Shown: positions 6,941 to 44,729, counted from the stretch's first letter. The stretch is DNA of 50,166 nt from Octopus bimaculoides (GCF_001194135.2 NC_068981.1:182782686-182832851), one strand, 5' to 3'. Notes: generated by a model from the sequence alone, not told the origin. Translations and numbers: made by a program.

Positions 6941-6941
<1 letters not shown>

Positions 6942-9008: not shown

Positions 9009-9009
9009 C

Positions 9010-9620: not shown

Positions 9621-9664
9621 TTGAACTACCCTGCTACTACAATATATATATGTATATATAAACA

Positions 9665-9845
9665 CCATTCAATTTTTTTTCTCCGTGTTTTTCTCCTTGT
9701 TTTCTCCGTATTCTTTCTGTTGAAGAGCGTAGCTCGAAACGTTAAAGACTTTCTGTATTCCCGAACGTCAAACTAATACATCCTTTTGTTGTTTACACCA
9801 CCTGTCCTCGTCTGTTGTTGTTTTTTTTTCGTACATTCTCCCATA
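9665..9845 (+). mobile_element. Penelope-like element terminal-repeat remnant between TA tracts
   Basis: gaagagcgtagctcgaaacgttaaagac has the typical PLE ...GA-stem-CGAAACG form; flanked by (TA)n. Confidence 0.65.
9712..9748 (+). ncRNA. Minimal type I hammerhead-like motif (core variant CUGUUGA)
   Basis: tcttt-CTGTTGA-A-GAGC-gta-GCTC-GAAA-C-GTT-aaaga: stem I tcttt/aaaga, stem II GAGC/GCTC, palindromic AACGTT stem III. Confidence 0.55.
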
Positions 9846-10199
9846 TATATATATATACATATATAATAATGTGACAAATTAATTTATAGATGATTCGTTA
9901 GTTTTTTTCCCTTTTTTGCAATTAACTTTGACAGATGTCCTTCTTAATAGGTGACTGTTCTCCAGAAACACAACAAGCACTCATACATATATACATACAT
10001 ACATGTCTGAATGTGTGTGTATGTGAATGTGTGTCCCTGCATTTGTGCATGTGTGTATATATGAGTGTGCGCGCATGCGTGTAATATTTTTGGATAAGAA
10101 ATATTCTATAGGCTTCAGTTATTAAGAATGGTCAGCAGGACATCTGTCAAAATTAACTGCAGAAGAAACAAAGTCGGTTCCACCACCACTCACAAAATT

Positions 10200-10254
10200 C
10201 TCTCTTTCTGTCTCTGTCTCTGTCTGTGTCTGTCTGTCTGTGTCTGTGTCTGAG

Positions 10255-10321
<67 letters not shown>

Positions 10322-10360
10322 CGAATGTTATATATATACGAATGTTATATATATAACATT
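10200..10360. repeat. Compound TC/TCTG/(CT)n/(TA)n microsatellite
   Basis: Directly visible. Confidence 0.9.
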
Positions 10361-11461
10361 CGTAAATATGCGTACATACACGCATTATAATAGAATACGA
10401 TTGGTTTCTCGAACAAGTAGAGCGTACGCATGCACCGTATATCTATTAATGAATAATAGTTAAAGGTTCCTACTGGCCCACAACTTTTCATTACACACAC
10501 ACACAAACACACACACGTACATATTTTATGCACACATTTATATGAATACACACGCACACACATATAACACACACACTGGCGCATATATATATGTACATGC
10601 GTTAATGTAGTCATATTAAGATGTATTTATGTATGTATGTATGTATGTATGTATGTATATATGTAGAGATTATACGCATACATAAGTACAGATATACAAA
10701 TACGCGATATCAGAGTAAAACAGTTATGTGTAAAGAGCTATTGTCTAAGAAAAGAAACACAACAGAGAAAAAGAGTGGAAAAAAAGGAAAGACAGAAAAA
10801 AGCAAGGGAGAGAGGGGGAAGAAAAAGAGAAAGAGAAAGGGATAGACAGAGAGCGAGAGAGCGAGAGAGGAGAGAGAAAGAAAGAGAGAGCGGGAGAAAA
10901 CTGACAGAAAATGAAACGAAGCGAGTGAAAGGAAGAGATTTATTGCAAAATTTCTGACAAACTATTTTACGGTTTAATTTGTAAACCTATTCGTCGGAAA
11001 GAATAAACTAAATAGTATAAATTCAAGTCAGAAAATGTTTGTCATGAGTTATTGCAAACAGCTGTTGGCTGTTAATAGTTACTTCTATAATGTCTAAAGG
11101 CTAAACAATTTCGAAACGTCACAGATAATTTCAATGTCGGCAGAAATGCTGGCAGACGACTGGTAGTAATTGTGTCTTATCGTCATTTCATTAAAGTGAA
11201 ATTCATGATTGATGCTCGTTGATTTGGCTGATGTGGCGTGGATAATGAATATATACATATCTCTAGAAATTTCACAAATAATTATGATGTAAGTACGCTT
11301 GCTAAGTTAATCTCCATTTCTCATATCATACGCACAAACGTCACTAACAGCAGCAGTAACAGACTAGCGACGATGGTGCCTTTAAGTGGTCATTAGGCAA
11401 AGTAAAACTGAAAATGAAATCTCCCTCAAATCCCACCCTAATACAAAATATTAAACCAAGA

Positions 11462-12080
11462 GGCGCAGGCGTAAGTGTATGATTAAGAAGCTTATTTCCC
11501 AACCTTGTGGATTTGGATTCAGTTCCACTGCGCAGCACCTTGGATAAGTGTCTTCTCCTGTAGTCCCGAACCGACCAAATCCTTGTGAGTGGATTTCGTA
11601 GACAGAAACTGTGTGTATTTCCATCATAGGCAGGGCCAACAAAACAAAATACTCCATTCAGTGAGTGATAAAAATCATCTAATATGCACAATTACGAAAG
11701 AGCTACTAACTGCTTCATGTTTTAAGATACATTAAACATGTCATATATCTCAAAAGCAATCTTTCAGGCTCAGTTTGTAACGTTAAATGTATTGAAAACC
11801 AGGACGCTGGCTTATGAGAAAACATGAGAAAAAAAAAATGTGAAGAAGAAATGCGCGCGTGTGTGCGCGCACGTGCGTGTCTGAGTTTGCGTTTGTTTCA
11901 CGCCACTCCTTGACAGCCATTGTTGGTTTGTTCGTATCCTCGTAACTTAGCGGTTTGGTAAAATAGACTGACAGAATATGTACCAAGGTTAATAAAATAA
12001 AACTGGGATGGTTTTGTTTGACTAAACTCTTCAAGGCAGAATACGAAAATGGCTGCAGTCCAATGAATGAAACAAGTAAC
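11462..12080 (+). mobile_element. SINE family A split by ~270 bp at its internal slot (head 11462-11612, tail 11885-12080)
   Basis: Head/CORE gcagcaccttggataagtgtcttctc...gtggatttcgtagacagaaact; tail cgtaacttagcggtttgg...ggctgcagtccaatgaatgaaacaag. Confidence 0.65.
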
Positions 12081-12134
12081 TGTTAAAAGACGAAGCGACC
12101 CTAATTATGTTAATCATATCTTTTATATCTTTAA

Positions 12135-12310
12135 TTTGTTTCTGTCATTAGACTGCGACCATGCTGGGGCACCACTTTGAAGAATTTTAGACGAACGAAT
12201 CGATCCCAGTACATTTCTTAAAACCTAATACTTATTCTATCGGTCTCTTTCTCTGAATCGCTAAGTTACGGGACATAAATACACCAAACGATGGGCAAAC
12301 ACAGACACAA
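12135..12310 (-). mobile_element. SINE family A 3' half; the matching head is probably at 14250-14330
   Basis: tttctgtcattagactgcgaccatgctgggg...cgctaagttacgggacataaa, followed by the CA/TA slot. Confidence 0.75.
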
Positions 12311-12344
12311 AGACACACACATAGATATACACAATAATATATAT

Positions 12345-12379
<35 letters not shown>

Positions 12380-12930
12380 NNNNNNNNNNNNNNNNNNNNN
12401 NNNNNNNNNNNNNNNNNNNNNNNNNNNNNNNNNNNNNTATATATGTATTAGCAGTAATACCCGTCATTGATCGGGTAATTACTTTTACTGTTTTTCGGGG
12501 GCCACATTCAAAGTATTGTTATATATATAGTTTACACCTCCTGTATGTGTGTATTTTTATAAGAGAGAAATACATAATAATTGAAGTAGAAAGAAGATCA
12601 ATTTCATACATGAACTTCTGTTTGTTTATTATATGACAATAATAGGCGAGTTGCATGTGTTATTTTATTTATCAATACAGTAGTGGCAATTATATAATAT
12701 ATTTATAATAGAAAAAAACATGTAATAATTGAAGTAGAAAAAGAGCATTTTCATTCATGAACTTCTGTTTATTTATTATATTATAGTAATAAATGAATTG
12801 CATGTATTATTTTACTTATCAATACAGCAATGGCAATTATATAATACAGTTCATTTAAATAGGTAATTTACTCAATCTTGAATGTAATGATAGTAATGTT
12901 AAGTTAAGTTATTGAAGTATTCATGTTGCA

Positions 12931-13830
12931 TTAAGAATGAATATTTCTATATAAACAGTGTTTTTTGTTTTATTTCGGTGGGGGGGGGGGCATAAGCAAA
13001 AAGATTTGCTTTTGTTTCCACACATAATGCCCTACATAAAGTTGACCATGTGAAAAGCATGGTTGTTCAAGTTGCAATCCACCAACTTTTAGTGTTTTTC
13101 CCTGACTTTTATTAATGCTCATGACAAAAGAAACCGGATAGGAAACTGTAACCGTTCAAATTGGAATGGGACATTAGGTGGTATAACTGGTATGCGAGGA
13201 ATGAAGACGGTCTCACATTTACCACAACCAGTGAGAATAACTGCCTCAATGCTGCTCCTCAAAAGTTTGTGCACAATTAATCTTGCACCATTGCATAACT
13301 TTGGTTGAGACAAATTACGCAATAGCATAATTGGAGTCCATTTTTTCAGCTGAAGACAATGAAGAGCTGTACCTGATAGTTGTAGTGAGTTAAAAAATTT
13401 GATGGGGTAGTTAACAATATCCTGATCATCAACAACACTATCAATTGATTTATAAGTGAATATTTCTCCCGGACTTTTATTCACTAGGATATTATTAATG
13501 CTATGTACAGAAACAGATTTTGGAGCCAGGATAGCTCGCTCACATATCCAATCTGTAGTGTTGTAATTACGAAGAAGATTAAGGAATACTTCATCCACCA
13601 AATCGTCGACGGAATCAGTTGAACTACATATTGGACTGAGTGTAAGAAACTGTTCTTCATCAATTGGAACTTTCCTTTCACCGAGTTTCAGAGGCTGCTC
13701 TGCAAATAGTTCAGCTGATTGATGTCTTAAAAGTCTCGATCTCATTTTTGTCAAAAGTTGGAGTGTTTTCACATGATGCCATAATACAGAAGACTTTATT
13801 GAAGCATTGAGCTTACCGATAGGGAAATGA
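12931..13830 (-). pseudogene. Helitron RepHel PIF1-family helicase C-terminal half, frameshifted
   Basis: LWHHVKTLQLLTKMR...RAILAP...PIMLLRNLSQPKLCNGARL...FIPRIP...RLQFPIR, then after a frameshift SINKSQGKTL...PCFSHGQLYV and NTVYIEI. Confidence 0.92.
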
Positions 13831-13974
13831 AATTACAAATGCAAATGAAATTACAAATGCTGTGTCCTGTCAGTCAGATTTAGGTTTACTCGTCCTGTAT
13901 GTGTGTTTTATAATATAAGAGAAAAATATGTAATAATTGTGTAGAAAAAAGATGGATTTCATATATGAACTTCT

Positions 13975-14222
13975 GCTTGTTCTTCAAGTTGCAATCCAGT
14001 AACTTTTAGTGTTTGGCCCTGACTTTTAGTAATGCTCATGGCAAAAGAAAGTGGGATAGGAAACTGTAAGGGCTTAAATTTGAATTGGACATTAGATGGT
14101 ATAACTGGTATACGAAGAGCGAAGACTGTGTCACGTTTACCACAACCAGTGAGAATATTTACCTCAATACAGTTCGTCATAAGTTTGTGCAAAATTAATG
14201 TTAGCTCCCTTGAACCATTTAC
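13975..14222 (-). pseudogene. Second, internally deleted copy of the helicase C-terminus
   Basis: NGSRELTL...IEVNILTGCGKRDTVFALRIPVIPSNVQFKFKPLQFPIPLSFAMSITKSQGQTL. Confidence 0.88.
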
Positions 14223-14249
14223 TTTCAGGATATTGTAGAGGATATTGTA

Positions 14250-14330
14250 GAAGCCCAAGGTACCACACAGTTGAATTGAATCCGCAATCCTGTGATTGGG
14301 AAGCAAGCAGTTTATCACACAGCCATATGC
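14250..14330 (-). mobile_element. SINE family A head
   Basis: cccaaggtaccacacagttgaattgaatcc...aagcaagcagtttatcacacagccata. Confidence 0.7.
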
Positions 14331-14504
14331 AATTTAATTTAATTTAGATGACTTTTGAAACTATTATTCAAAGATTACCTCGTTATCATTACGTATTTAA
14401 TTAGGACAGACACAGTATGGTCACAGACCACTGACTGAAACAAGAACAGTTAAAAGACAACATCTGCAGCAAAATAATCCGTTCTACTACAAGCACAAGT
14501 TTCT

Positions 14505-14658
14505 TTTGCCGTACAGTCTCCGTCTATTAAATTCACTCAAAGCGCATTGGTCGGCCCGGGACTATAGTTGAAGACACTTGCTCAAGGTGCCATGCAGTGG
14601 GACTGAACCTGAAATCACGTGGTTGCAAAGTAAGCTTCTTAACCACACAGCCCTGCCG
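14505..14658 (-). mobile_element. SINE family A head plus CORE
   Basis: ggtcggcccgggactatagttgaagacacttgctcaaggtgccatgcagtgggactgaacc...aaccacacagcc. Confidence 0.8.
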
Positions 14659-15585
14659 CACGTTTTGCAGTAAAAGAAAAAGTCGACCTCTGCATAATTT
14701 GAACTCAGAACGTAAAGACGGAAGAGATGCCGCTAAGCATTTTATCCGGTGAGGTAACGATGAATTACAATATCGTTAGAAAGCAGAAAGATAAAGAAGA
14801 AAGAAAGTATGGTAGACGGAAACATGTAATCACAGAGACAATGATTTAACGTGTGTATATTTCGATATTATATTTTATATATTTCCAAATTTTCCAATTT
14901 AGAATTAAAATATTCAGGGAAAGAAAAATCGTCCACCACAAAAGATTAACAACAAAAGCTGTTATAATAGCGACAAAAACAACAAAAAGATAAACAACAG
15001 CCAAATGACAGCTACTAACATACATAAGTTGAAGTTGTAATTTTTCCCCTCGAGCTCTAATCATCTATGCATATCGAACACTGATCATAAAAAAAAAGTA
15101 AGCATCAAATATTAATAGAAACACTGAAGTTGTCATCATCAATCAGTATGACCATCTCAAGATGGCGGAACTCTGACATACAGACGAGAGCTTTTATCTT
15201 CATAGTAATTAGATTCCAACAAAGATAAATGCTTTTGATTCAAATGAGATTAAATTACAGTCTGAGGTAAATTTAATGATTTATAGCTAACCTCCGTCTG
15301 GGTTCATACCGACCATGTTGACGGGATAGATTTATCTGATAAATACACTATAGGTGTGGCATTAGTATCCCATCTAAAGACAAATCTCGGGATTGTTTTG
15401 TGGAGAGTAATCATTAGCAAATCAGTTATTCATTATTATTTAACTCGTAGGTTTGGTGGTAAATGACTGGGAAAGATAAACATCGAGAATATTCTTTCGT
15501 TCGTTTGACTTGTTTCAATAACTATGTAATTATTGAAACGGCGTTTCTATGCAACACAGTATAAGTAGAAACTTTTATTATTGGA

Positions 15586-16142
15586 AAGATGGTGAGCTGG
15601 CGGTATTCCTATCACGCCGGACAAAATGCTTAGCGTCAGTTCATCCGTCTTTACGTTTTGTTTTCAAATGTCGTCGCGGTCGACTTTGCCTTTCATCCTT
15701 TTTGGGGTCGATGAAATATATACCAGCTCAGCACTAGGGTCGATGTAATCGACTTACTCGCACCCCCAAATTTCCATACCTTGTGCCTATTAATAGAAAC
15801 GATTATTATTATTATTGAAAGCGGCGAGCTTGGCAGAATAATTACCTCATCGGACAAAATGCTTAGCGGCATTTCTTCCAACTTTACGTTCTGAGTTCAA
15901 ATTTCGCTGAGGTTGACTTTGCCTTTCATCCTTTCGGGGTCGATAAAATAAGTACCAGTTGAGCACTGGGGCCGATGTCCTGGACCATATCCCAAATTTC
16001 AGGGTTTATGCCTATAAGGGAGAGAATTATTTCCGCCGAGGTTAACCTTGCCTTCCATCATTTGAGCACTGAGGCCGGTGTAGCCGAGTTACCTCCTCCA
16101 CTAAAATTGATGGCCTTATACTAAAATTTGAAACCATTATTA
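15586..16142 (+). mobile_element. Head-to-tail stack of three family B SINEs (15586-15815, 15818-16030, 16030-16142), tail type 2
   Basis: Repeated ctttgcctttcatcctt core; the first tail ends gattattattattatt and the next head follows immediately. Confidence 0.85.
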
Positions 16143-16914
16143 TAAAGTCGTATCTCTTTTAGTTAGAACCAATGATCAGCGAGCAAAATATTTCACGCGT
16201 TGCTGAAGTTAATAATAATTCTGACAGTTGAATTGCTATAGTAACAAATTGAATTATTTTATAACTTATGATAACACAACTGCGTTATATGATTGACCAT
16301 GACAGTAGAGCAGCGAATTAACTTCATTATAGAATATAGCTGAGACTTTCATTAGTTTTAATGAGGTCTGTTTTGCCTTTCATATCCTCGCTATCAACTT
16401 TTGTCTCATTTTATTCATTTTTGATTTGATTTTATTTCAACTTTCCCTTTATCATCTCATTTATTTCTGATATAAAAGGAATGTTCTGGAAGAAAGCTAA
16501 AGCTAAGAACATAATCGTTTTAACTGTTTGACTAACTAAATTCAACACCAAATATTTGCGTTTCAGTTGTTTATCTTTTTCTTTAATTGCATACAATATC
16601 CTTGTGAATCAATAACGATTTATTGTAAACTTTCACTTTCAAATATACTATCATCGACATTAAAATAAAATATTCTTTTTGTTTTTTTTACTATCTACCA
16701 TATAACCTTCATCTCTTTTTTACTCATTATTATTTTGAATTGAAGTATTGCAATTATTAAAACAATGGATAACAGCGCTATAATTTAAATAATAGATTAC
16801 ATTTGATATGTAGAAATTACTCAGAAGACACAAGAGATGAATTAAGAATTATACATACATACATACATGCATACATACACATACCTGTTTGTGTGTGTGT
16901 GTACGTATGTGTTT

Positions 16915-17055
16915 GAAGGTGCGTGGCCTAGTGGTTAGAATGTTACACTCAATAGTAAGATCGCGGTTTCGATTCCCGCAGTTTCGATTCCCGGGGTGGT
17001 GCATTGTGTTCTTGAGCAAAACTCTTCATTTCACGTTGTTCTCTCTACTGAAAAG
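16915..17055 (+). mobile_element. tRNA-headed CORE-like SINE, second type, with duplicated B box
   Basis: gtggcctagtggttag...gtttcgattcccgcagtttcgattcccc...ttgtgttcttgagcaaaactcttcatttcacg. Confidence 0.75.
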
Positions 17056-18169
17056 TAATGTTTATTGTCTCTTCAGCATGGCTGTTTCGTATAATGTTAC
17101 TACTCTTTTATAACCCCAGGAGAACATTTCCTCCAGCTGGTTAACAACACAACCTGTGTCCGATTTACTGTGAGCAGGAGAGCGAACTCCTTTTTGAGAG
17201 GAACAAGAGGCCAGCCTGGTTTCACGGTGTTTTCCCTTCCTCAGTGCTGGTCACCTGTCTGCTAAAGATAGCAGTCGTTCGCCCCAACTCGCTATATATA
17301 GAAAAATAAGCGACATTCAGCCACTGATTTTGCAACTAGCAAAGTTGGTAGTTCTAAAATCATTATAAGATATGTAAGTAGTAACTCTACCGAAAAGAAT
17401 ATAAATATACATACATACATACATACATACATATACACATTCATACATNNNNNNNNNNNNNNNNNNNNNNNNNNNNNNNNNNNNNNNNNNNNNNNNNNNN
17501 NNNNNNNNNNNNNNNNNNNNNNNNNNNNNNNNNNNNNNNNNNNNNNNNNNNNNNNNNNNNNNNNNNNNNNNNNNNNNNNNNNNNNNNNNNNNNNNNNNNN
17601 NNNNNNNNNNNNNNNNNNNNNNNNNNNNNNNNNNNNNNNNNNNNNNNNNNNNNNNNNNNNNNNNNNNNNNNNNNNNNNNNNNNNNNNNNNNNNNNNNNNN
17701 NNNNNNNNNNNNNNNNNNNNNNNNNNNNNNNNNNNNNNNNNNNNNNNNNNNNNNNNNNNNNNNNNNNNNNNNNNNNNNNNNNNNNNNNNNNNNNNNNNNN
17801 NNNNNNNNNNNNNNNNNNNNNNNNNNNNNNNTATATATTTATATTTATATATTTATATATTTGATCCTTTATATTGAACACTCAATATTTCATCTACATT
17901 CAATACTTTCTTTCATGGTGCCATCCATTTTTATTTTATTTTATTTTATATTATATATTGTATATTATATTATATATTGTATATTCCATATTCTATACCC
18001 CACATTGGTTCTGCAGGAATATAAATAAAACATAAAAAACAGACAGTGTTGGAACTCTTTTAAACTAAATTATATATATATATATATATGTATGTGCGTG
18101 TGTATATACATATATTATATGTATTAATATATATATACACCACGTACGCGCTAACACACACATGTTTAT

Positions 18170-18330
18170 AAGAAAAGAGATGACGAAAGAATAAACGATT
18201 ATCTTATGAACTTCGGTAGCTTACAGCTGTTTCCACTATAAGATGCGATGGACTCATTGCTGAGCACCTTACAGCTTCATCAGAGCCATAAATATAACTA
18301 ACACTTCATCTAGAATCAGACATGTATTGA
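18170..18330 (-). mobile_element. Penelope-like remnant
   Basis: agcttacagctgtttc...cttcatcag, flanked by TA tracts; contains the hammerhead motif below. Confidence 0.6.
18217..18288 (-). ncRNA. Type I hammerhead ribozyme-like motif with intact core
   Basis: Minus strand: tggct-CTGATGA-A-gctgtaaggtgc...gcatcttatagt-G-GAAA-C-agct-GTA-agcta; 12-bp stem II with 3 G-U pairs, 5-bp stem I, GUA cleavage triplet. Confidence 0.7.
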
Positions 18331-18366
18331 GTTCTACACTAGGTTATTAGTATCGCTATGCCTAAG

Positions 18367-18414
<48 letters not shown>

Positions 18415-18774
18415 AATGGATGCGTGGCCTTAAATCAAATAATAATATATATAATTTAATAGTATGTTGGAAAACGCGACAGATTTCGGCTAAATAAACG
18501 GTTTCGTACTCTACACCTGTATTGCACACAGTTTAAAAGTAAACCATCATAGCGTGTGGAATTCGAGCCACGTTATATAGTGATATGCTGTTAAAACCAT
18601 GGAAGCTATTCAATTAGTTTGTGTAGCAGTGACAGTCTTACGCAACAACATTCGGCTTAAGGGAAACCTGTGTATGTCACATATATAGCTTAAAATGGAA
18701 ATTACGTTACCTGCATTTATTGCTGTGAAACGTAAGTTGCGATATAAACTTTTAGTTTCAGTTCAATGAAAAAA

Positions 18775-18820
<46 letters not shown>

Positions 18821-19649
18821 TTAATGGCTTAGTCAGAAAAGGTAGGGCAGAGTCCATATTGTTTTTCCTGGCGTCCATGACTGTTTGGAGGACGGGAAGA
18901 AATTATTCACGATACTAGAGACCTGATCCGAAGGACTCGGCTTAAGGGCCAAGGGCCAAGCGCTGGTATTGAACCGGAAGGCGGATTTGAAATAGCATAA
19001 CCCGATCAGAAGTGCGTGTAAAATATTAATTTATAACCATCTCATTTTTGGACAACTAAGTTGTCGATTCCCTTTCATAAAAAATGAAAAACGAAATTAC
19101 AAGCAGTATTTATTCCTTGATTTATATACTGAAAACTACGAACGAACGGCACTTTTTTCTATGTCTACAATATATTTTATGTATTTTTCCTGTTATCTAT
19201 TGAATTGTGTTGTTGCTTTCCTGATTATGGTAACGTGGAATGACGAAAGCAGCAACCAATCTCTACAGAGAAATGCAATTCTATCGCAGGTTTTCATCTG
19301 TCGTTTTTACACGGATACATTTCCAATGACGTTTGTGTGATTTATTACTTCTGTCATGCCCATTGCACAAAAGCAAACTTGTGCAGTATTGTGTTCGTTA
19401 AAGTTCAGTATTGTATGAACGATGATTCAGATGTAATAATACAACGTAATATCAAATATATACCGCAAACACGCAGAGGTTTCAGCTTAGTTTTCTCCGG
19501 AGGAAAAAGAAAAAGAAACAAAGTAAAAAAATCTATTTTGTAAATCTAACGATTCAATAATATATAACTATTATTGGTGATAGTGGCGGATGATATAACA
19601 AAGCGTTATCTAAATACAATGCAGCAGATATACGAACGAATAACGAAGC

Positions 19650-21565: not shown

Positions 21566-21790
21566 GGCGGCGAGGTGGTTGAATCGTTAGCACGCCGGAG
21601 AAAAATGCTTAGCAGTATTTCTTCCTGCTTTATGTTCTGAGTTCAAATCCCGCCGAGGTCGACTTTGCCTTTCATCCTTTCGAGCTCAATGAAATAAGCA
21701 CTAGTTGAACACTGGGGTTGATGTAAACGACTTAAACCCTCTCCCGATATTACTGACCTTGGGCCAAAATTTGAAACGATTAGTATTATT
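21566..21790 (+). mobile_element. Full-length SINE family B, tail type 2
   Basis: ggcggcgaggtggttgaatcgttagcacgcc...gaggtcgactttgcctttcatcc...ccttgggccaaaatttgaaacgatt. Confidence 0.85.
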
Positions 21791-26095: not shown

Positions 26096-26714
26096 TTAAC
26101 GTCTGTTATCCATGTTGGCATGGGTTGGACGGTTTGACCAGGGCTGGTAAGCTGGAAGGCTGCACCAGACTCCAGTTTGATTTGGCATGGTTTTCTACGG
26201 CTGGATGCCCTTCCTAACGCCAACCACCCTGAGAGTGTAATGGGTGCTTTTACGTGTCACCGGCACGGGTGCCACTTGTGTGACACCAGTATCTGCTATG
26301 ACTGCAATTTTGCTCAGCTTGATTGGTCTTCTTCTCAAGCAGGACATAATGCCAAAGATCTCGGTCATTACCTCTGTGAGGCCCAACACTCGAAAGATGC
26401 TCTTTACGTGCCACCGGCACGGGTGCCAGTTACGTGACACCAGCACGGGTGCCAGTTACGTGAGACCAGCATCAGCCATTACTACGATTTCACTTGGCTT
26501 GACGGGTTTTCTCAAGCACGGCATAATCGCCAAAGGTCTTGGTTACCAGTCATTGCCTCTATGAGGCCCAAAGTGAAGATCATGCTTCACCACTTCGTCC
26601 CGTGTTTCCCCGGGTCTGCCTCTAACACAAATTCCCTCCACAGTTAGAGATCGGCGCTTCTTTACACAGCTGTACTCGCCCATACGTATCATATGACCAT
26701 ATCAGTGCAGTCGT
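26066..26714 (-). mobile_element. RTE-clade LINE 3' end with (GAT)n tail and tandem duplication
   Basis: Minus translation LH*YGHMIRMGEYSCVKKRRSLTVEGICVRGRPGETRDEVVKHDL (RTE WxGHVxRM...GRP..W C-terminus); 3' UTR motif ggctggatgcccttcctaacgccaacc; (CAT)n at about 26066-26095. Confidence 0.88.
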
Positions 26715-26721
26715 CTCTTGG

Positions 26722-26915
26722 AAGAATTTGAACTTAGAACGTAAAGAGCCAGAAGTAATTCTGCTAAGTATTTTGTCTGACGCGCTAATGTTTCTGCTAG
26801 CGTAATAATTATTTCCAGCTAGAGCAGAACGCCTGAAATTTGTGTGAGAAGGGTTAGGCAAATGAATTGATCCTAGGAGTTGATTAGTATTTTATTTTAA
26901 TGATCCCCAAAGATG
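26722..26915 (-). mobile_element. Family B SINE fragments
   Basis: gaatttgaacttagaacgtaaagagcc...gcctgaaatttgtgtgagaagg. Confidence 0.6.
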
Positions 26916-27059
26916 TATAATACTATAGGCTACTGTTGTGAGTTCTCATTTTACGTGATTTGAACACGTTACCTTCGACAGTGAATTCTCTTAAGTGTTG
27001 TACTATTAGGAAAAAAAAAAAGACTCAAAAGGGTTATTGTATTTTACCGGTTACATGAC

Positions 27060-28473
27060 TAAACACAGCTAAACACATTTCGCGCAAATTGCTTTTCGCA
27101 CACGAATACAGAAGGCTGCCTGAAGGTCATCTGGTATGAATACAAATTAGTAACGGTGAATATTCTAAGTAGAGAGGGATACGGTGTCCCCTCCCCAAGA
27201 GATAATAAATAATACAAAAGAAAGAACAATAATCTATAGAACATATTCAACAGAAGCAGGGAAAATATAAATTATGGCAACGACGCAAATTGAAAGAGCA
27301 TTAAGACCAATCTTGCAAAAAATTAAATATCTTGCTAGAGGAACAAAATATGGAACAATAGAAGAGGTTACATTCGGCAACCCCGTTGAAAAATGAAGAA
27401 ATGGTACTTCTACCCACATACCTTGGGAGGCGTGCTTCCAGGGTAAAGGTAGAAGGCATACCACCGGAAATTGATGTGGCCTGGATAGCAGCCACCGTAC
27501 TCGGAAACGAGGAAAAAATAACGGTTCTCCAGATCACAAAAACAGAATACAAAAATTGGAAAGGACACACTCTGAATATGATTATGCAGTGGTCGCCAGA
27601 AAACATTAAAAATTTGACTGAAACTGTCGCGATAGAAAATGTGATAATAAGGGTCAAGGTGGAGGGCAGGACCCTGCGATGTTACAAGTGTGGCCTAAAA
27701 GGCCACATTAGAGCGGACTGCCCTTCGCCGCTCAAAAAGCCCTAGAAAAGACCTCAGGAAGGACCAGTGAGAAAGGAGGAGGTCATGCCACCAGCAACAA
27801 CAGAAGAAAAGGAAGATAAGGAAAAGAACAACGAATGGGAAATGGCTGGGAGAAGGAAAAGAAAAAAGTCATGTCACGTGGGTATAGAACCCCACCCCCA
27901 CCCTCTTTGCCCCATTCTTCCCCTCTAACAGACACCAAACTTCCCCACTCGCCTCCGACACAAAGAAGAGCAAACACACAAAAAAACCCCCAAAATACCC
28001 CCTCCTGCCGAGGAAAAAAGTAATTATGTAGTGATGTATGACAAATCAAATGAGGAACTCGTCGAAGAATTGAACACTTGGGAAGACGTAGTTGCAGTGG
28101 GTTCAAAAGCGTATACCAATGTACAAGGGTGGGATAGAAATTCTTGATGGTGACCCAGGAGCAATTAGAAAAAGTAATGGAATACGATCATGGATATAAG
28201 TACTGGAAAATAAAGATGGACATAAGTCAGCTACCATACTATGTAGACTACATGGACCTTCTAACGGAATACAAAACTGACATTTTATCTGGAACTCAGA
28301 TCAAAGTGAGGTATAAATGAAGCCGCTCGGAGGTAGGGCCGAAAAGCTTCATTACATTTTTCATTTTCCACCTCATTTTGCTGTCATACATTTTTCTTTT
28401 TTTTCTTTGTTGCTTGCCCCACATGTCTTGTATTGTCCCCTCTGTGTGGCCCCTTGTGGGTAATAAAAACCAG
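27060..28473 (+). mobile_element. ORF1-only (gag-like, zinc-knuckle) non-LTR element, copy A
   Basis: Homologous along its length to 28590-30089; decayed ORF with CYKCGLKGHIRADC (27680-27721); pyrimidine-rich 3' UTR ending ccccttgtgggtaataaa; no APE or RT motifs seen. 5' boundary uncertain. Confidence 0.75.
27170..28320 (+). pseudogene. Decayed CCHC zinc-knuckle ORF1/gag-like protein (copy A)
   Basis: PQEIINNTKERTIIYRTYSTE...MATTQIERALRP...VKVEGIPPEIDVAW...RVKVEGRTLRCYKCGLKGHIRADCP, then a Lys/Pro-rich region and a C-terminal domain; several frameshifts and stops. Confidence 0.8.
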
Positions 28474-28589
28474 AGTTTGTTTCGAGTCCATCGTTATAGG
28501 ATTCGTTTACTTATGCACAGCATTGACGTACGTGAGTGTTATCGTTTATTGTTAAAATATTTTATTGTTAAAATTGTTACGGCAGTATG

Positions 28590-30089
28590 TTGACGCTTTT
28601 CTCCTTCGAAGAAGGGGGTTAGCCCAAGTATTAATGATGGAATACGAAAACCTCACCTTCTCGGAGCTAACGTCTTCTGAAGAGGAGCAGTTCAAGTCTG
28701 TCGAAATAATGGACGAGCAGTTGAAGAAAAGGAATTTTGCAGCTGTCGTCAAGAGCCACAACAGTGAGTCGAACTGGCGGAGCTGAGTAAATATAAAAAC
28801 ATGCTGTGTAGGGAGGGGTGCGAAGTAAAGGTGTTCCTTCCCCAAGAAATTATGAAAGATACCAACGAGAATATATAGAACATACTCCACGGAAACAAAG
28901 AAAATTGAAATAATGCCAACCACACAAGTAGAAGAAGCCTTGAAACCAATCTGGCAAGGAATTTCGTACCTTGCCAGAGGAAAGAAGTACGGAACAGTGG
29001 AGGTGCGTTTCCGAGAGAAAGCTACTGCCAGGCTACACTCGGCAACCCCTTTAAAAACAGAAGTGGTACTTCTACCCATATACCCTGGGAGACATGCTTC
29101 CATAGATTGACGTAGCCTGGCTAGTAGCTGCCATACTGCTAGGAAATGAAGATAAGATAGTGATCCTCCAGGCCACAAGAAGAGCTCATAAGAATTGGCA
29201 AGAACAGTCCCTGGATATGATTATCCAAGTGTCCCCGGAATACAACGAAACTATCGCTATAGTAGACTTGATAATTAGGGTTAGGGTGGAGGGCAGGACC
29301 CGGGTTGCTACAAGTGTGGCCCAAAAGGCCACATTAGAGCGGACTGTCCTCCGTCGCCCCAAAAGCCCCAAGAAAAACTCGTGAGCAGGGAGGAAGTCGC
29401 ACCACCAGCACCAACAAAAGGAAACTCAAGTACTTTGGAAGAAGCAAACAAAGAAGGGATTGAGTGGGAAACGGTCGGAAAAAGAAAAAGGAGGAAAAAT
29501 GTACATCCTGTGAATGTAAACCCCCCATCAACACCCACTTTGCTCCATCCTCCCCCTACAGACGCCAAACCTCCCCACTCCACTCCGACACAAAGAAAAA
29601 CGCAAACACACAGGAGCCCCAAAACTTCCCCTCCCCCGGCCTGTGATAAAAGAAAATAGTAGTAATATATGACGATTCCAAAGTAGAACTCTGCAAAGAG
29701 ATAGATACTTGGGAAGACCTAATAACAGTGAATACGGCAACTTATACTGGGATACCATGGCGCTATAATTGTGTGTTGGCAACCCAGGATCAAATGTGTA
29801 AAATAGCCAATTACAATGAAGACTTTGAATATTGGGAGAAAACAATTGACACCAACTATCTTGATCTCCGAGAGAATTACAAAATTGACATTCTACAGCC
29901 AAACAGTGCTGGATCGAATTAAGGTCGTGTAAACAAAATAAATGAAGTCGCTCGGAGGTGGGGCCGAAAAGCTTCATTACATCTTTTCATTTTCAATTTC
30001 ATCTCATTTTTCTTTCATTCGTTTTTTGTCCCCACATGTTTTGTGTTGTCTCCTCTATATTTACCCCGTGTGGGAATAAAGAATTAGAG
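28590..30089 (+). mobile_element. ORF1-only (gag-like, zinc-knuckle) non-LTR element, copy B
   Basis: Same architecture as copy A; 3' end ttaccccgtgtgggaataaagaa. Confidence 0.75.
28634..29922 (+). pseudogene. Decayed CCHC zinc-knuckle ORF1/gag-like protein (copy B)
   Basis: MMEYENLTFSE...KKRNFAAVVK...MPTTQVEEALKP...GTVEVRFREKATARLHSATPL...CYKCGPKGHIRADC (29306-29347)...WETVGKRKRRK; frameshifted. Confidence 0.8.
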
Positions 30090-31312
30090 TATTTTTCGAG
30101 TCAGCTTATACCTTTACTCTTTCTCAAGCACACCTTAGATTCTAATATCTTACATACTCTCATTGTCGTTATGAACTATACAAGTAGAGCATTTGTAGTG
30201 TATTTTCTTGTTCAAAAATTCTGTCATGTTCTAAATAACAAAGATGAACTGTTCAAGCATTGTTTTGAACTATTAATACCTTCTACATCTATTGAACTTC
30301 GAATGCTATTTTAAATACTTGTTATCGCTTGTTGAAAATGTATGTACAAAACGAAATTTCGTAATAAAAAAAAATGGAACTTCAATCCCCTACATCACCT
30401 AATACAGTGACCTGGCTGTTGTTTCTAGCACCGAGTTTTCTCTCTAATCTTCATAAAAGAATAACCTCACAGTTTCACTAAAGTTGATGACTCCCTATTT
30501 TAAGAACACGATACACTTTTTGAGACAACTCAATGGAGGGGATATAGCGTTGTAATATACTCTTATCCTATATGTCAAATAAACGCCCAGAAGAATTTTT
30601 GAGACATCAAGAACAATATCGTTAAATTGACCGTCCATTCATTGTGAAAGAAACCATTTTCTCAGCATGTCACAATTGAAGATGCGTTTGCTTTCTGGAT
30701 TCAAGAAGCGCAAGATTTATAGATTTCTCTTTCTATAAAACCCATAGATCTTTCATATTATCCCTGTGTTGTAGGACGAAGTTCTCAAAGGCATTTAGTC
30801 TCCATATTGCCTTCACTTCCTCAAAGAAAGAAGATACCGAATGCTTCACGTCGAAAAATGCCTAATTTATCCCATAGCCGAAAAATTGCTTGGGTCAATA
30901 AATTACCAACAAGAACATGTCTGCTTCTCTCTTTAAATTTGATCGGAAAAAAGCACATGTCAGCCTCTCACCGAGAGAACAAATTTTCTGATTGAGCTTT
31001 ACCGTGTTTTCCCGATCATTGCCGCTTCGCAAGCAACCATAGCAGATTGCAGAACAGTCTGAGTCAATTACAACCAAGTACGTATCTGCCTTAACTTTGT
31101 TTGATGATGGGACCATGAAAAGTTTAGAATTTTCTTCATTTCGACTCTTAAACGGGCCGAAAAAAGGTAAACAACAAATTTTACCCACCTCATCTAATGC
31201 CAACGCGAGTTTCCGGGTTTGTCAACTGACAGCTTCCATTCAGTACTGAATAACTCTTAACTTCAACTCACTCAATTCTCTATCTCTTAGAGCACAATTT
31301 ATCATCAATACA

Positions 31313-34094: not shown

Positions 34095-34479
34095 GTTGTT
34101 GTTGGCACCCCGTCGCTTACGACGTCGAGGGTTCCAGTTGATTCGATCAACGGAACAGCCTGCTCGTGAAATTAACGTGCGAGTGGCTGAGCACACCACA
34201 GACACGTGTACCCTTAACGTAGTACTCGGGGATATTCAGCGTGACACAGTGTGACAAGGCTGACCCTTTGAAATACAGGCACAACAGAAACAGGAAGTAA
34301 GAGTGAGAGAAAGTTGTGGAAGAGTACAGCAGGGTTCGCCACCATCCCCTGCCGGAGCCTCGTGGAGCTTTAAGGTGTTTTCGCTCAATAAACACTCACA
34401 ATGCCCGGTCTGGGAATCGAAACCGCGATCCTATGACCGCGAGTCCGCTGCCCTAACCACTGGGCCATTGCGTCTCCAC
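34095..34479 (-). mobile_element. Long tRNA-headed SINE family C, young copy
   Basis: Reverse complement of 38367-38754 with about 20 differences by hand alignment. Confidence 0.9.
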
Positions 34480-36417: not shown

Positions 36418-36637
36418 AGACGATGAGCTAGCAGAGTCATTAAAACGCTGGGAGAAATGTTTAGCAGCATTTCGTCCGTTTTTACGTTCTAAGTCCATAT
36501 TCCGCCGAGGTCGATTCCGCCTTTCATCCTTTCGGGGTCGACAAAATAAGTACCAGTGTTCACACTGAGTAGATATAATCGACTTACTCTGCTCTCACGA
36601 AATTGCTGGCTTTGTGCCAAAATTTGAAACAGATAAT
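36418..36637 (+). mobile_element. SINE family B, tail type 2
   Basis: gatgagctagcagagtc...tccgccgaggtcgattccgcctttcatcctttcggggtcg...tgtgccaaaatttgaaac. Confidence 0.85.
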
Positions 36638-38366: not shown

Positions 38367-38754
38367 GTGGAGGCGCAATGGCCCAGTGGTTAGGGCAGCG
38401 GACTCGCGGTCATAAGATCGCGGTTTCGATTCCCAGACCGGGCGTTGTAAGTGTTTATTGAGCGAAAACACCTAAAGCTCCACGAGGCTCCAGCAGGGGA
38501 TGGTGGCGAACCCTGCTGAACTCTTTCACCACATCTTTCTCTCACTCTTACTTCCTGTTTCTGTTGTGCCTGTAATTCAAAGGGCCAGCCTTGTCACACT
38601 GTGTCACGCTGAATATCCCCGAGAACTACGTTAAGGGTGCACGTGTCTGTGGAGTGCTCAGCCACTTGCACGTTAATTTCTCGAGCAGGCTGTTCCGTTG
38701 ATCTGATCAACCGGAACCCTCGTCGTCGTAAGCGACGGAGTGCCAACAACAAAC
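38367..38754 (+). mobile_element. Long tRNA-headed SINE family C, young copy
   Basis: A box tggcccagtggttag, B box ggtttcgattccc, 3' end cgtaagcgacggagtgccaacaacaaac. Confidence 0.9.
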
Positions 38755-39469: not shown

Positions 39470-39913
39470 TTTTTTCTGTTATAGGCAAAAGGCCTGAAAT
39501 TATGGGGTGGAGCGGTGCAAGTTCAGGGAGGGGGCATATTCTTGTACTTATTTCAACCAATCTGAAATGATAAAAGGCAAAGTCGACCTCGGCGGAATTT
39601 GAACTCAGAACGTAATGGCGGACGAAATGCCGCTAAGCATTTGTCCGGTGTGCTAACGATTCTGCCAGTTCACCACCTAAACGACAACAACAACAACAAC
39701 AATAATAATCCCTTCTACTTTAGACACAAGGCCTGAAATTTGGGTGGACCGGGTAAGTCGATTACATCAACCGCCAACTGGAACTTAATTTATCGATCCC
39801 GAACATTGAAAGAAAGTTGACCTCGGCGGAATTTGAACTCAGAACCTGGCGGCAGACGAAATACCGCTAAGCATTTCGCCCGAAGTGCTAACGTTTCTGC
39901 CAGCTCGCCGCCT
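39470..39913 (-). mobile_element. Two stacked family B SINEs (39470-39678, 39708-39913), tail type 2
   Basis: Both contain cctcggcggaatttgaactcagaac; separated by (CAA)n(TAA)n; (CTAT)n follows at about 39916-39956. Confidence 0.88.
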
Positions 39914-44539: not shown

Positions 44540-44689
44540 NNNNNNNNNNNNNNNNNNNNNNNNNNNNNNNNNNNNNNNNNNNNNNNNNNNNNNNNNNNNN
44601 NNNNNNNNNNNNNNNNNNNNNNNNNNNNNNNNNNNNNNNNNNNNNNNNNNNNNNNNNNNNNNNNNNNNNNNNNNNNNNNNNNNNNNNNN

Positions 44690-44729
<40 letters not shown>

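What the first reader, a model, noticed from the sequence alone, without database searches (positions are those of the whole stretch)
27060..30089. Tandem pair of ORF1-only zinc-knuckle elements (HAL1-like non-autonomous family) from two lineages
Seen: two head-to-tail ~1.4-1.5 kb units about 115 bp apart. Each has an FAxV/I-type N-terminal motif, an aligned central region, one CX2CX4HX4C knuckle and a K/P-rich stretch, but no endonuclease or RT. Their deletions are complementary (A lacks VRFREKATA, B lacks RVKVEGIPPE), so an ancestor can be rebuilt. A/B differences look biased to synonymous or conservative changes (GGA AAC GAG GAA AAA ATA vs GGA AAT GAA GAT AAG ATA). Known: L1/Tx1-clade ORF1 proteins can carry such a knuckle, and ORF1-only derivatives of L1 (HAL1) exist in other animals. 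Inference: these are two subfamilies of a protein-coding non-autonomous retroelement that diverged under selection and later came to lie side by side, rather than a neutral local duplication.
Basis: partly seen in the sequence, partly recalled or inferred. Interest (0 to 1): 0.85.

Follow-up and report, generated by a model that had tools for sequence, protein, structure and literature searches.

The report
Dead ORF1-only LINE copies in tandem
Two decayed, head-to-tail copies of an octopus jumping gene that kept only its RNA-binding "ORF1" protein and lost its reverse transcriptase, so it must have borrowed the copying machinery of a related full-length LINE; an uncommon but already known life-style (like mammalian HAL1), here found in a cephalopod.

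Summary
The two units are real: A is about 27022-28471 and B about 28472-30085, on the + strand. Both are pseudogenes of one ~430-aa ORF with an N-terminal xFAxVV motif (kept only in B), tandem RRM-like domains, one CCHC knuckle, a K/P-rich linker and a C-terminal domain. A ~165-nt 3'UTR follows. The window has no endonuclease or RT.

Homologues occur only in Octopoda (522 HMMER hits). In O. sinensis, O. vulgaris and Argonauta hians, distant homologues (30-46% aa) are ORF1 of full LINEs. Their ORF2 has APE, RT and zf-RVT domains and is closest to human L1 ORF2p. A and B share the last ~70 nt with such a LINE (95% over 40 nt).

An O. sinensis relative with the same ORF1-to-3'UTR junction is a solitary 1599-bp insertion with an 18-bp target-site duplication. 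The ORF2-less unit therefore retrotransposes as such, which is a HAL1-like life-style.

A/B dN/dS is 0.37, against 0.8-1.0 in shifted-frame controls, so this was not neutral divergence in place. The "115-bp spacer" is B's 5'UTR: the units abut, and a ~50-nt start of a third unit follows B. Head-to-tail joining recurs in the relatives. "Two lineages" is plausible but unresolved. Moderate interest: a new member of a known kind.

The parts
27011..27021 (+). A11 run directly upstream of unit A's 5' end; meaning unknown
   Evidence: Sequence. Similar A-runs precede the 5' ends of L007 (A8) and L001 (A7). No TSD was found for the array.
27022..28471 (+). Unit A: decayed ORF1-only LINE derivative (~1450 bp; internal deletions in the 5'UTR and N-terminus)
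   Evidence: Alignment with B; HMM hits E = 9e-55, 1.5e-11 and 1.1e-8; boundaries inferred from L007, L010 and L006 termini.
27022..27168 (+). Unit A 5'UTR remnant. It includes the 'HFAQIAF' reading at 27076-27096, which is not the family motif. The region homologous to B 28634-28800 is deleted.
27169..28320 (+). Unit A ORF1 pseudogene in five frame segments: 27169-27363, 27365-27925, 27928-28020, 28019-28144, 28144-28317. In-frame stops lie near 27265 and at 27743-27745 and 28142-28144. It lacks the VRFREKATA strand of the first RRM-like domain.
27680..27721 (+). Unit A CCHC zinc knuckle (CYKCGLKGHIRADC)
   Evidence: Pfam PF00098, E = 1.9e-5; coordinates.
28019..28317 (+). Unit A C-terminal domain of ORF1 (VVMYDKSNEEL...), also present in relatives
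28317..28352 (+). Unit A 3'UTR hairpin ATGAAGCC...GCTTCAT, which begins right at the ORF1 stop
   Evidence: Fold -12.2 kcal/mol, z = -1.7. Conserved in B and L003 with one compensatory pair; broken in L002. Weak evidence.
28417..28471 (+). Unit A conserved 3'-terminal block (CCCCACATG..TTGTATTGTCCCCTCT..CCCCTTGTGGGTAATAAAAACC) shared with the autonomous LINE
   Evidence: 95% identity over 40 nt to the 3' end of the O. vulgaris full-length LINE (L005); alignments.
28472..30085 (+). Unit B: full-length (1614 bp) but decayed ORF1-only LINE derivative
   Evidence: Same length class as the TSD-flanked 1599-bp L010 element; HMM hits E = 5e-38, 7e-20 and 5e-9.
28472..28633 (+). It starts AGAGTTTGTTTCGAGTCC and contains a TTATTGTT-repeat region.
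   Evidence: Homologous to the 5'UTRs of L002-next, L003-next, L005 and L007. The 5' start motif matches the TSD-defined L006 start TTTTTTTCGAGAC.
28634..29922 (+). Unit B ORF1 pseudogene in six frame segments: 28634-28783, 28780-28875, 28871-29101, 29106-29303, 29306-29656, 29656-29919. It lacks the RVKVEGIPPE strand (beta1 of the second RRM-like domain).
28733..28756 (+). Unit B N-terminal family motif NFAAVVKS
   Evidence: The same motif occurs in P0005 (KKFAEVV), P0006 (NDFASAA), P0108 (KSFAAVA) and L001 (KTFAEAT).
29306..29347 (+). Unit B CCHC zinc knuckle (CYKCGPKGHIRADC), cut off from the upstream frame by a 1-nt deletion
   Evidence: Pfam PF00098, E = 3.2e-4.
29656..29919 (+). Unit B C-terminal domain of ORF1
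   Evidence: In P0004 (O. bimaculoides) the K/P-rich region runs in frame into this domain.
29942..29977 (+). Unit B 3'UTR hairpin
   Evidence: Fold -13.0 kcal/mol, z = -2.45.
30030..30085 (+). Unit B conserved 3'-terminal block ending AATAAAGAATT
30086..30134 (+). C': start of a third unit (AGAGTATTTTTCGAGTC...GCACACC), 5'-terminal ~50 nt only. Homology fades after that.
   Evidence: Aligns with the first ~50 nt of B's 5'UTR. There is no further similarity downstream.

Best explanation
27022-30134 is a decayed head-to-tail array. It holds unit A, unit B and the first ~50 nt of a third unit.

What the units are. They are ORF2-less ('ORF1-only') derivatives of an octopod LINE of the L1/Tx1 group. 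Each unit once had a ~160-nt 5'UTR and a ~430-aa ORF1. The ORF1 comprised an N-terminal xFAxVV motif, tandem RRM-like RNA-binding domains, one CCHC knuckle, a K/P-rich linker and a C-terminal domain. A ~165-nt 3'UTR followed, whose last ~70 nt match those of the autonomous LINE. There is no poly(A) tail; the unit ends a few nt after AATAAA.

How they worked (inferred). The element RNA was translated into ORF1p, which coated its own RNA. The endonuclease/RT (ORF2p) of a co-resident full-length LINE recognised the shared 3' end and copied the RNA into the genome by target-primed reverse transcription. This is the same strategy as mammalian HAL1.

History (inferred). Only copies that still made ORF1p left descendants, so the lineage kept ORF1 under purifying selection after losing ORF2. 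A and B descend from diverged members of that lineage and were joined 3'-end to 5'-end, as is usual in this LINE group. The mechanism of joining is not shown; the candidates are RT template jumping and insertion at the end of a resident copy. Both then decayed neutrally, by roughly 9% per copy, and each lost a different core beta-strand.
For: Shown.
- Family and architecture. The HMMER profile gives 522 hits, and all named ones are from Octopoda. Intact relatives of 340-620 aa have the same domain order.
- Fold. An AF2 model of relative P0005 has pLDDT >90 over residues 70-290. The top Foldseek PDB hits all contain tandem RRMs (SFPQ/NONO, IMP3 RRM12, Prp24; prob 1.0).
- Autonomous relatives. 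L004: ORF1, then 42 nt, then ORF2 starting 'MANLRIGCLNVRGL'. L005: intact ORF1 of 503 aa and ORF2 of 1132 aa. L006: ORF1 of 527 aa, ORF2 in 812 + 291 aa pieces, and a 16-bp TSD.
- ORF2 identity. Pfam finds Exo_endo_phos, RVT_1 and zf-RVT. The best PDB match is human L1 ORF2p, E = 2e-71 over EN+RT, against 1e-24 for R2. L1-Tx1 is the only L1-type LINE superfamily listed for O. vulgaris (PMC13282606).
- ORF2-less relatives. A, B, L002, L003 and L010 share one ORF1-stop/hairpin/T-rich/terminal-block 3'UTR. No ORF2 lies within 10 kb of L010, nor anywhere in the window.
- Retroposition of the unit. L010 is 1599 bp with an 18-bp TSD (17/18). Its rebuilt empty site is a continuous SINE.
- Shared 3' end with the LINE: 95% over 40 nt (alignments).
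- Selection. A-B dN/dS is 0.37 (bootstrap 0.27-0.52), against 0.79 and 1.02 in shifted frames. By region it is 0.21-0.28 for the N-terminus, RRM domains and CCHC, ~1.0 for the K/P linker and 0.52 for the C-terminal domain. Other ORF1-only pairs give 0.18-0.45. Against L010, pN/pS is ~0.5 with saturated pS. The 3'UTR is more conserved than the ORF (82.7% versus 71.6%).
- Head-to-tail joining elsewhere. It is seen at L002->next, L003->next, L001->next and in three 99%-identical full LINE units in L005. Solitary L007 starts exactly where the 'spacer' starts in arrays.
Against: - No TSD or other insertion hallmark was found for the window array itself.
- The third unit is only a 5' fragment, which target-primed reverse transcription alone does not produce.
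- A and B are each other's nearest known relatives (68% aa; lowest pS, 0.51). A local origin therefore cannot be excluded by phylogeny. It is excluded only by the selection argument, which assumes that copies are not under host-level selection in place.
- Trans-mobilisation by the LINE's ORF2p is inferred, not shown.
- The autonomous LINEs found have ORF1s only 30-46% identical to A and B. The actual partner has not been identified.
- L1 versus Tx1 placement rests on domain content and the best PDB hit, not on an RT tree.
- The species of the window is unknown.
Confidence: 0.85

Rival explanations
1. One ORF1-only copy inserted here and was then duplicated in place (unequal crossing-over or replication slippage). 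A and B diverged at this locus.
For: A and B are each other's closest known relatives: 68% aa in the core and the lowest synonymous distance of all pairs. Near-identical tandem units in L005 show that local amplification or homogenisation does occur in this LINE group. The array ends in a partial unit.
Against: Divergence in place would be neutral. Instead dN/dS is 0.37 overall and 0.21-0.28 in the structured domains, with shifted-frame controls near 1. The 3'UTR is more conserved than the ORF. A duplication of a solitary insertion cannot create a direct 3'-end/5'-end junction without flanking DNA. The protein library was clustered at 50% identity, so closer relatives of A or B may simply be hidden.
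Confidence: 0.07
2. A and B are ordinary full-length LINE insertions that each lost ORF2 by deletion after insertion. On this reading they are not members of an ORF1-only family.
For: Homologous ORF1s are found in full ORF1+ORF2 LINEs. Both units carry many other deletions.
Against: The same ORF1-stop-to-hairpin junction and ~165-nt 3'UTR occur in A, B, L002, L003 and L010, which are only 43-68% identical in protein. Independent deletions would not share end points. L010 is flanked by a TSD at 1599 bp, so it inserted already without ORF2.
Confidence: 0.03
3. The units are a tandem cluster of host genes (domesticated gag/ORF1-like ZCCHC proteins, in the manner of ZCCHC3 or L1TD1) that later became pseudogenes.
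For: Purifying selection acted on an intronless ORF with its own AATAAA signal. Tandem arrangement is typical of gene families. Some relatives are annotated as genes (LOC106871568, LOC118765946).
Against: There are hundreds of diverged, mostly fragmentary copies restricted to octopods. Relatives are linked to APE-RT. L010 is a TSD-flanked insertion inside a SINE. The 3' end is shared with a LINE. Pfam RBD_ZCCHC3 domains are not matched, and hhalign aligns only the knuckle. The annotated 'genes' are chimeric or truncated models.
Confidence: 0.03
4. The units are gag remnants of an LTR retrotransposon or endogenous retrovirus.
For: A CX2CX4HX4C knuckle is typical of nucleocapsid. The profile's PDB sequence hits are retroviral NC knuckles.
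Against: There are no LTRs and no PR/RT/IN. The direct repeats are the units themselves. Homologues sit upstream of APE-type endonuclease plus L1-like RT. The fold upstream of the knuckle is tandem RRM, not capsid.
Confidence: 0.01

Closest known systems
HAL1 ('half-L1') of mammals: non-autonomous L1 derivatives that encode only ORF1p (Smit 1999; Bao & Jurka 2010, as cited in PMC5753468)
   Same: It keeps ORF1 and lacks ORF2. It keeps the 3' end of the autonomous LINE. It inserts as a unit with a TSD (L010). ORF1 stayed under purifying selection after ORF2 was lost. The parent is an L1-group LINE.
   Different: The host is a cephalopod. ORF1p is the RRM + CCHC 'type I' kind rather than the coiled-coil/RRM/CTD kind of mammalian L1. 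There is no poly(A) tail; instead there is a conserved ~70-nt 3' block ending just after AATAAA. Copies are often joined head to tail. It has no sequence relationship to mammalian HAL1, so this is an analogue and not a member.
L1-Tx1 LINEs of octopus (13 recently active families listed for O. vulgaris in PMC13282606); the full-length elements found here in L004, L005 and L006
   Same: Homologous ORF1 (30-46% aa) with the same domain order. Homologous 5'UTR motifs. A near-identical 3'-terminal block. The same habit of direct head-to-tail arrays (L005).
   Different: A and B lack the 3.4-kb APE-RT-zf-RVT ORF2 entirely. Their unit is 1.6 kb instead of 5.3 kb.
HeT-A of Drosophila telomeres (gag-only non-LTR element that depends on the RT of TART/TAHRE and lies in head-to-tail arrays)
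   Same: A gag/ORF1-only, CCHC-bearing non-LTR element found in head-to-tail arrays alongside RT-encoding relatives.
   Different: HeT-A belongs to the Jockey clade and is telomere-specific with a host function. Here the parent is L1-like. The loci seen are chromosome-internal (for example 31.9 Mb of 40.2 Mb in L005). Solitary TSD-flanked insertions exist. No telomeric role is indicated.
Type I LINE ORF1 proteins (RRM plus CCHC knuckle; Khazina & Weichenrieder classification, recalled from memory) and vertebrate ZCCHC3-type ORF1/RBD proteins
   Same: Tandem RRM-like domains followed by a CCHC knuckle. The nearest vertebrate ORF2 relatives (fish, 29% identity) carry RBD_ZCCHC3_1st/2nd plus CCHC in their ORF1 part.
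   Different: The octopus ORF1 does not match the Pfam RBD_ZCCHC3 models, and hhalign aligns only the knuckle. It has one knuckle rather than three, and an extra C-terminal domain.

Membership tests
LINE (non-LTR retrotransposon) of the L1 group (L1/Tx1): ORF1 component | ORF1 is homologous to the first ORF of elements whose second ORF encodes APE endonuclease plus RT | tested here: met
   L004, L005 and L006 have a homologous ORF1 followed by ORF2 with Exo_endo_phos and RVT_1.
LINE (non-LTR retrotransposon) of the L1 group (L1/Tx1): ORF1 component | The ORF2 of the autonomous relatives is L1-like (C-terminal Cys-His motif; closest to L1 ORF2p) | tested here: met
   Pfam zf-RVT, 37 bits against a cut-off of 27.5. 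Human L1 ORF2p E = 2e-71 over EN+RT, against 1e-24 for R2.
LINE (non-LTR retrotransposon) of the L1 group (L1/Tx1): ORF1 component | RT phylogeny places the element inside the L1 or the Tx1 clade | not tested
   No reference RT set (Repbase/RTclass1) was available. The only support is that the literature lists 'L1-Tx1' as the L1-type superfamily of O. vulgaris (PMC13282606).
LINE (non-LTR retrotransposon) of the L1 group (L1/Tx1): ORF1 component | RRM-type RNA-binding fold plus CCHC knuckle in ORF1p | tested here: met
   AF2 model of relative P0005 (core pLDDT >90) matches tandem-RRM proteins in the PDB. Pfam zf-CCHC matches in A and B. The fold was tested on a relative, not on the broken window copies.
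HAL1-like (ORF1-only, non-autonomous LINE derivative) | ORF1 present; endonuclease and RT absent from the unit | tested here: met
   There is no ORF2 similarity in the window (best E 3.1). The units are 1.45 and 1.61 kb, against 5.28 kb for the full LINE.
HAL1-like (ORF1-only, non-autonomous LINE derivative) | 3' terminus shared with an autonomous LINE of the same genome group | tested here: met
   95% over 40 nt, and a conserved ~70-nt block, with the L005 LINE 3' end. The partner was found in O. vulgaris; the species of the window is unknown.
HAL1-like (ORF1-only, non-autonomous LINE derivative) | The ORF2-less unit itself retrotransposes (dispersed copies, same junction, TSDs) | tested here: met
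   L010 is 1599 bp with an 18-bp TSD inside a SINE. The same junction is seen in A, B, L002, L003 and L010. For the window array itself no TSD was found.
HAL1-like (ORF1-only, non-autonomous LINE derivative) | ORF1 kept under purifying selection after loss of ORF2 | tested here: met
   dN/dS is 0.18-0.45 among ORF1-only copies, with shifted-frame controls near 1.
HAL1-like (ORF1-only, non-autonomous LINE derivative) | Mobilised in trans by the partner's ORF2p | not testable with these tools
   This needs a retrotransposition assay.
Mammalian HAL1 family proper | Sequence descent from mammalian L1 ORF1 (Transposase_22 / coiled-coil-RRM-CTD) | tested here: not met
   No Pfam L1 ORF1 domains were matched. 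No PDB L1 ORF1p sequence hit was found. The family is restricted to octopods. It is an analogue only.
HeT-A-like telomeric gag-only elements | Jockey-clade origin and telomere-specific head-to-tail arrays | tested here: not met
   The parent ORF2 is L1-like. The loci are chromosome-internal, and solitary TSD-flanked insertions exist. Head-to-tail arrays themselves are present.
LTR retrotransposon / retroviral gag | Flanking LTRs and a pol (PR-RT-IN) partner | tested here: not met
   There are no LTRs. The relatives carry APE-RT, not pol.
ZCCHC3-type RNA-binding proteins | Match to RBD_ZCCHC3_1st/2nd domains | tested here: not met
   The Pfam scan of the octopus ORF1 gives no such hit even at E <= 5. 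The profile-profile comparison aligns 17 knuckle residues only.

The most novel reading that the evidence does not exclude
The head-to-tail joining may be a built-in property of this octopod L1/Tx1 lineage rather than an accident. New copies would be added directly onto the ends of resident copies. This could happen by end-to-end template jumping of the RT between co-packaged RNAs of different subfamilies, or by targeting of the element's own terminus. Gag-only and RT-bearing elements would then build mixed arrays, a HeT-A/TART-like partnership at non-telomeric sites in a mollusc. On this reading the A|B junction, which joins two units that diverged under selection, would be the scar of a single two-template insertion event.
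Probability: 0.2. Interest if true: 0.6.

Novelty: new member of a known kind. Interest (0 to 1): 0.38.

Why it matters
ORF1-only LINE derivatives are well documented mainly in mammals (HAL1) and, in a special telomeric form, in Drosophila (HeT-A).

A cephalopod example has a different ORF1 type (RRM + CCHC), a sequence-specific 3' end and long-term purifying selection on ORF1. This suggests that needing one's own ORF1p while borrowing ORF2p is a general, repeatedly evolved niche for LINE parasites.

It also gives octopus repeat annotators a concrete family. Gene predictors currently mis-call its members as 'uncharacterized' or 'CCHC-type domain-containing' genes, or fuse them to host exons. 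The family also shows a reproducible 3'-to-5' joining that could be used to study how LINE arrays form. The two copies in this window are themselves dead and have no evident function.

Tried and rejected
- Rfam (E <= 5) on 26500-30600. I was looking for a hammerhead or other ribozyme, as in Penelope-like or retrozyme tandem elements. Only chance-level hits appeared, so the idea was dropped.
- The 3'UTR hairpin as a structured RT-recognition element. It has only modest stability (z -1.7 to -2.6), one compensatory pair, and is broken in L002. I kept it as a minor feature.
- The word-indexed protein search found only 3-4 homologues, both with the single sequence and with a 5-sequence profile. The family looked tiny until the exhaustive HMMER search.
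I rebuilt it from window sequences plus returned proteins.
- P0004 was not on record for a contig look-up.
- ZCCHC3-type homology of the RNA-binding part is not detectable by Pfam or hhalign.
- Names of ORF2 homologues did not resolve L1 versus Tx1. The ZCCHC3 paper gave no evolutionary lead.
- A TSD search around the window array found only an A9 run shared between the flanks.
- A search for more of a third unit downstream of B, or of a unit upstream of A, gave local alignment scores no better than shuffles.
- The NJ tree with bootstrap could not say whether A and B are sisters (25% of replicates) or belong to different sub-clades. The first attempt timed out.
- The weak tblastn hit at 8587-8766 (-) was not supported by the family HMM.


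Full report
**1. What is in the window**

Positions 27022-30134 (+ strand) hold two homologous units. MAFFT aligns them at 78% mean column identity. BLASTN gives 66% over 1381 nt, and nothing else in the 50-kb window resembles them.

Three-frame translation shows that almost the whole of each unit was once one ORF. In order, it comprised:
- an acidic N-terminus (..SELTSSEEE..) and an NFAAVVKS motif;
- a 'TIIYRTYS' segment;
- two RRM-like modules;
- one CX2CX4HX4C knuckle (Pfam zf-CCHC, the only Pfam hit);
- a K/P-rich linker;

A ~165-nt 3'UTR follows. It begins with a small hairpin (ATGAAGYCGCTCGGAGG..GCTTCAT) and ends a few nt after AATAAA.

Both units are pseudogenes.
- A needs five frame segments, has three in-frame stops, and has lost the first ~85 codons and the VRFREKATA segment.
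- B needs six frame segments and has lost RVKVEGIPPE.

With 30+ homologues as outgroups, the two deletions are indeed private and complementary. On an AlphaFold model of an intact relative, each removes a core beta-strand.

**2. Corrections to the observation**

The xFAxVV motif exists only in B (28733-28756). The 'FAQIAF' read in A (27076-27096) aligns with B's 5'UTR.

The '115-bp spacer' is B's 5'UTR. It is homologous to the 5'UTRs of relatives. A solitary relative (L007) starts exactly at the homologous point. TSD-defined elements end just after AATAAA (L006, L010).

So A (about 27022-28471) abuts B (28472-30085, 1614 bp). The ~50 nt after B (30086-30134) repeat the first ~50 nt of a unit and then lose similarity.

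**3. Relatives**

The word-indexed protein search found only four octopus proteins. The exhaustive HMMER search found 522 proteins at E <= 1e-3 and 196 at E <= 1e-10. All hits that carry a source name are from O. bimaculoides, O. vulgaris, O. sinensis or Argonauta hians. Several are chimeric gene models that fuse the ORF to host exons.

Intact relatives of 340-620 aa have the same domain order. An AF2 model of one of them (P0005; core pLDDT >90) matches tandem-RRM proteins in the PDB, such as SFPQ/NONO, IMP3 RRM12 and Prp24. By sequence, only the knuckle matches anything solved.

**4. The ORF is a LINE ORF1**

| Locus | Species | Structure |
|---|---|---|
| L004 | O. sinensis | 615-aa homologue, then 42 nt, then 'MANLRIGCLNVRGL..': an APE endonuclease, RT and C-terminal zinc motif (frameshifted) |
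| L005 | O. vulgaris | Three head-to-tail units of 5277 bp, 99.1-99.6% identical. The first has an intact 503-aa ORF1 and an intact 1132-aa ORF2 |
| L006 | Argonauta hians | Solitary element with a 16-bp TSD, an intact 527-aa ORF1 and ORF2 in two pieces |

ORF2 carries Exo_endo_phos, RVT_1 and zf-RVT. Its best solved relative is human L1 ORF2p, at E = 2e-71 over EN+RT, against 1e-24 for R2. A 2026 repeat annotation of O. vulgaris lists L1-Tx1 as the L1-type LINE superfamily there, with 13 recently active families (PMC13282606). I could not run an RT phylogeny, so L1 versus Tx1 stays open.

**5. A and B belong to an ORF2-less lineage**

The window has no ORF2 similarity at all (best E 3.1).

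A, B and the relatives L002, L003 and L010 share one 3' organisation: ORF1 stop, hairpin, T-rich stretch, conserved terminal block. L001 is a further internally deleted copy. These copies are only 43-68% identical in protein. The loss of ORF2 is therefore old and shared, not private.

The last ~70 nt are shared with the autonomous LINE: A 28428-28466 is 95% identical over 40 nt to the 3' end of the L005 LINE.

The decisive locus is L010 (O. sinensis CM016880.1). It holds a 1599-bp element with a 384-codon open ORF1 and no ORF2 within 10 kb. It is flanked by an 18-bp TSD (17/18) inside a SINE. Joining the flanks restores a continuous SINE, 87% identical to SINE copies in our window. The ORF2-less unit therefore inserts as such.

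**6. Selection**

| Comparison | dN/dS | Note |
|---|---|---|
| A-B overall (Nei-Gojobori) | 0.37 | bootstrap 0.27-0.52; pS 0.51, pN 0.26 |
| Same nucleotides, two shifted frames | 0.79 and 1.02 | control |
| N-terminus/RRM-like domains/CCHC | 0.21-0.28 | |
| K/P-rich linker | 1.0 | |
| C-terminal domain | 0.52 | |
| Other ORF1-only pairs (B-L002, A-L002, B-L007, A-L007, L002-L007, B-L003, L002-L003) | 0.18-0.45 | |
| Pairs against L010 | pN/pS ~0.5 | synonymous sites saturated |

The 3'UTR is better conserved between A and B than the ORF is (82.7% versus 71.6%).

Individual insertions are not expected to be under selection in place, so most of the A-B divergence must have accrued along replicating lineages.

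As a rough inference, assume omega of about 0.2 while the lineages were active. About 0.19 substitutions per site of the A-B distance is then neutral decay, or roughly 9% per copy. On the octopus calibration quoted in PMC13282606, that is of the order of 25 My.

**7. Head-to-tail joining**

Direct 3'-end/5'-end junctions occur in the window (A|B and B|C'). They also occur after L002, after L003 and after the L001 element, and between the L005 LINE units. Solitary copies exist too (L006, L007, L010).

The mechanism is not shown. Candidates are RT template jumping between RNAs, insertion at the end of a resident copy, and local amplification. Local amplification fits the 99%-identical L005 units but not the selected divergence of A and B.

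A 5'-only third unit, and the absence of a TSD for the window array, remain unexplained. Later deletion is the simplest account.

**8. Lineages**

A and B are each other's nearest known relatives. The NJ tree puts B with L002/L003/P0007/P0013 (56% bootstrap) and A with L001/P0015/P0008 (30%). A and B are sisters in 25% of replicates. The library is clustered at 50% identity, so nearer relatives may be hidden. 'Two lineages' is plausible from the selection argument but not demonstrated by phylogeny.

**9. Rejected alternatives**

- Penelope-like or retrozyme tandem elements: no ribozyme was found.
- LTR or retroviral gag: there are no LTRs or pol, and the relatives carry APE-RT.
- Host ZCCHC gene cluster: the family has hundreds of decayed copies, TSD insertions and linkage to a LINE; Pfam RBD_ZCCHC3 is not matched, and hhalign aligns only the knuckle.
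- Private post-insertion loss of ORF2: the junction is shared, and L010 has a TSD.

**10. Verdict**

The interpretation as a HAL1-like ORF1-only derivative of an L1/Tx1-type LINE, diverged under selection, is supported.

It is a new member of a known kind, in an under-annotated animal group. The recurrent head-to-tail joining is the one feature that deserves follow-up. The copies in this window are dead.

Noticed in passing
window 34096-34319 and 38529-38752: Inverted repeat arms of 224 nt, 94% complementary and 4.2 kb apart. A chimeric octopus gene model (P0011) matches both arms at protein level (up to 90% over 39 aa). This is probably another repeat family or a TIR-bounded element.
   Followed up: no
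window, e.g. 6410-6540, 15826-15951, 21566-21697, 36421-36549, 39564-39912: Many copies of the octopus tRNA-like SINE lie in both orientations. They served as the 'empty site' reference for the L010 insertion.
   Followed up: partly
L005 (O. vulgaris OX597840.1) 4445-19184: Array of three head-to-tail full-length LINE units, period 5277 bp, 99.1-99.6% identical. Unit 1 has intact ORF1 (503 aa) and ORF2 (1132 aa), so it may be active. The last unit is cut at unit position 4190. A 30-47-nt poly(A) run sits inside each 5'UTR (for example 15222-15256).
   Followed up: partly
L004 (O. sinensis CM016872.1) 9722-9780 and 15351-15380: The full-length LINE is flanked on both sides by (ATT)n. This suggests insertion into, or generation of, an ATT microsatellite in that subfamily. 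The window units do not show this.
   Followed up: no
window 27011-27021; L007 1071-1078; L001 ~9744-9750: A-runs (A11, A8, A7) lie directly upstream of the 5' ends of three copies of the ORF1-only clade. They could be a remnant of the extreme 3' end of a further unit, non-templated addition at the 5' junction, or target preference.
   Followed up: no
L001 (O. bimaculoides CM046605.1) 9534-9600, minus strand: An isolated ~70-nt 3'-terminal fragment of the family lies in inverted orientation just upstream of the L001 element. It looks like a severely 5'-truncated insertion, as LINE-type retroposition produces.
   Followed up: partly
window A 28317-28330 / B 29942-29955 versus L005 6060-6110 and L004 11854-11900: The 3'UTR of the ORF1-only units starts 'ATGAAG.C.CTCGGAGG', which loosely resembles the ORF2 start region of the LINEs (ATG..., ...GGCCTCGGG for 'RGLG'). 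In addition, 'ATAAATG' recurs at the L005 ORF2 stop. This may mark the end points of the ancestral ORF2 deletion. It is a suggestion only.
   Followed up: no
window 28552-29178, minus strand: A 208-aa antisense ORF overlaps B's N-terminal half. It is not conserved in A, and the shifted-frame controls show that selection acts on the + strand frame, so it is probably spurious.
   Followed up: partly
window ~17450, ~12380, ~44540-44690: Runs of N (assembly gaps) next to microsatellites show that the window comes from a gapped scaffold assembly. The species could not be identified; no protein in the libraries is more than 72% identical to A or B.
   Followed up: no
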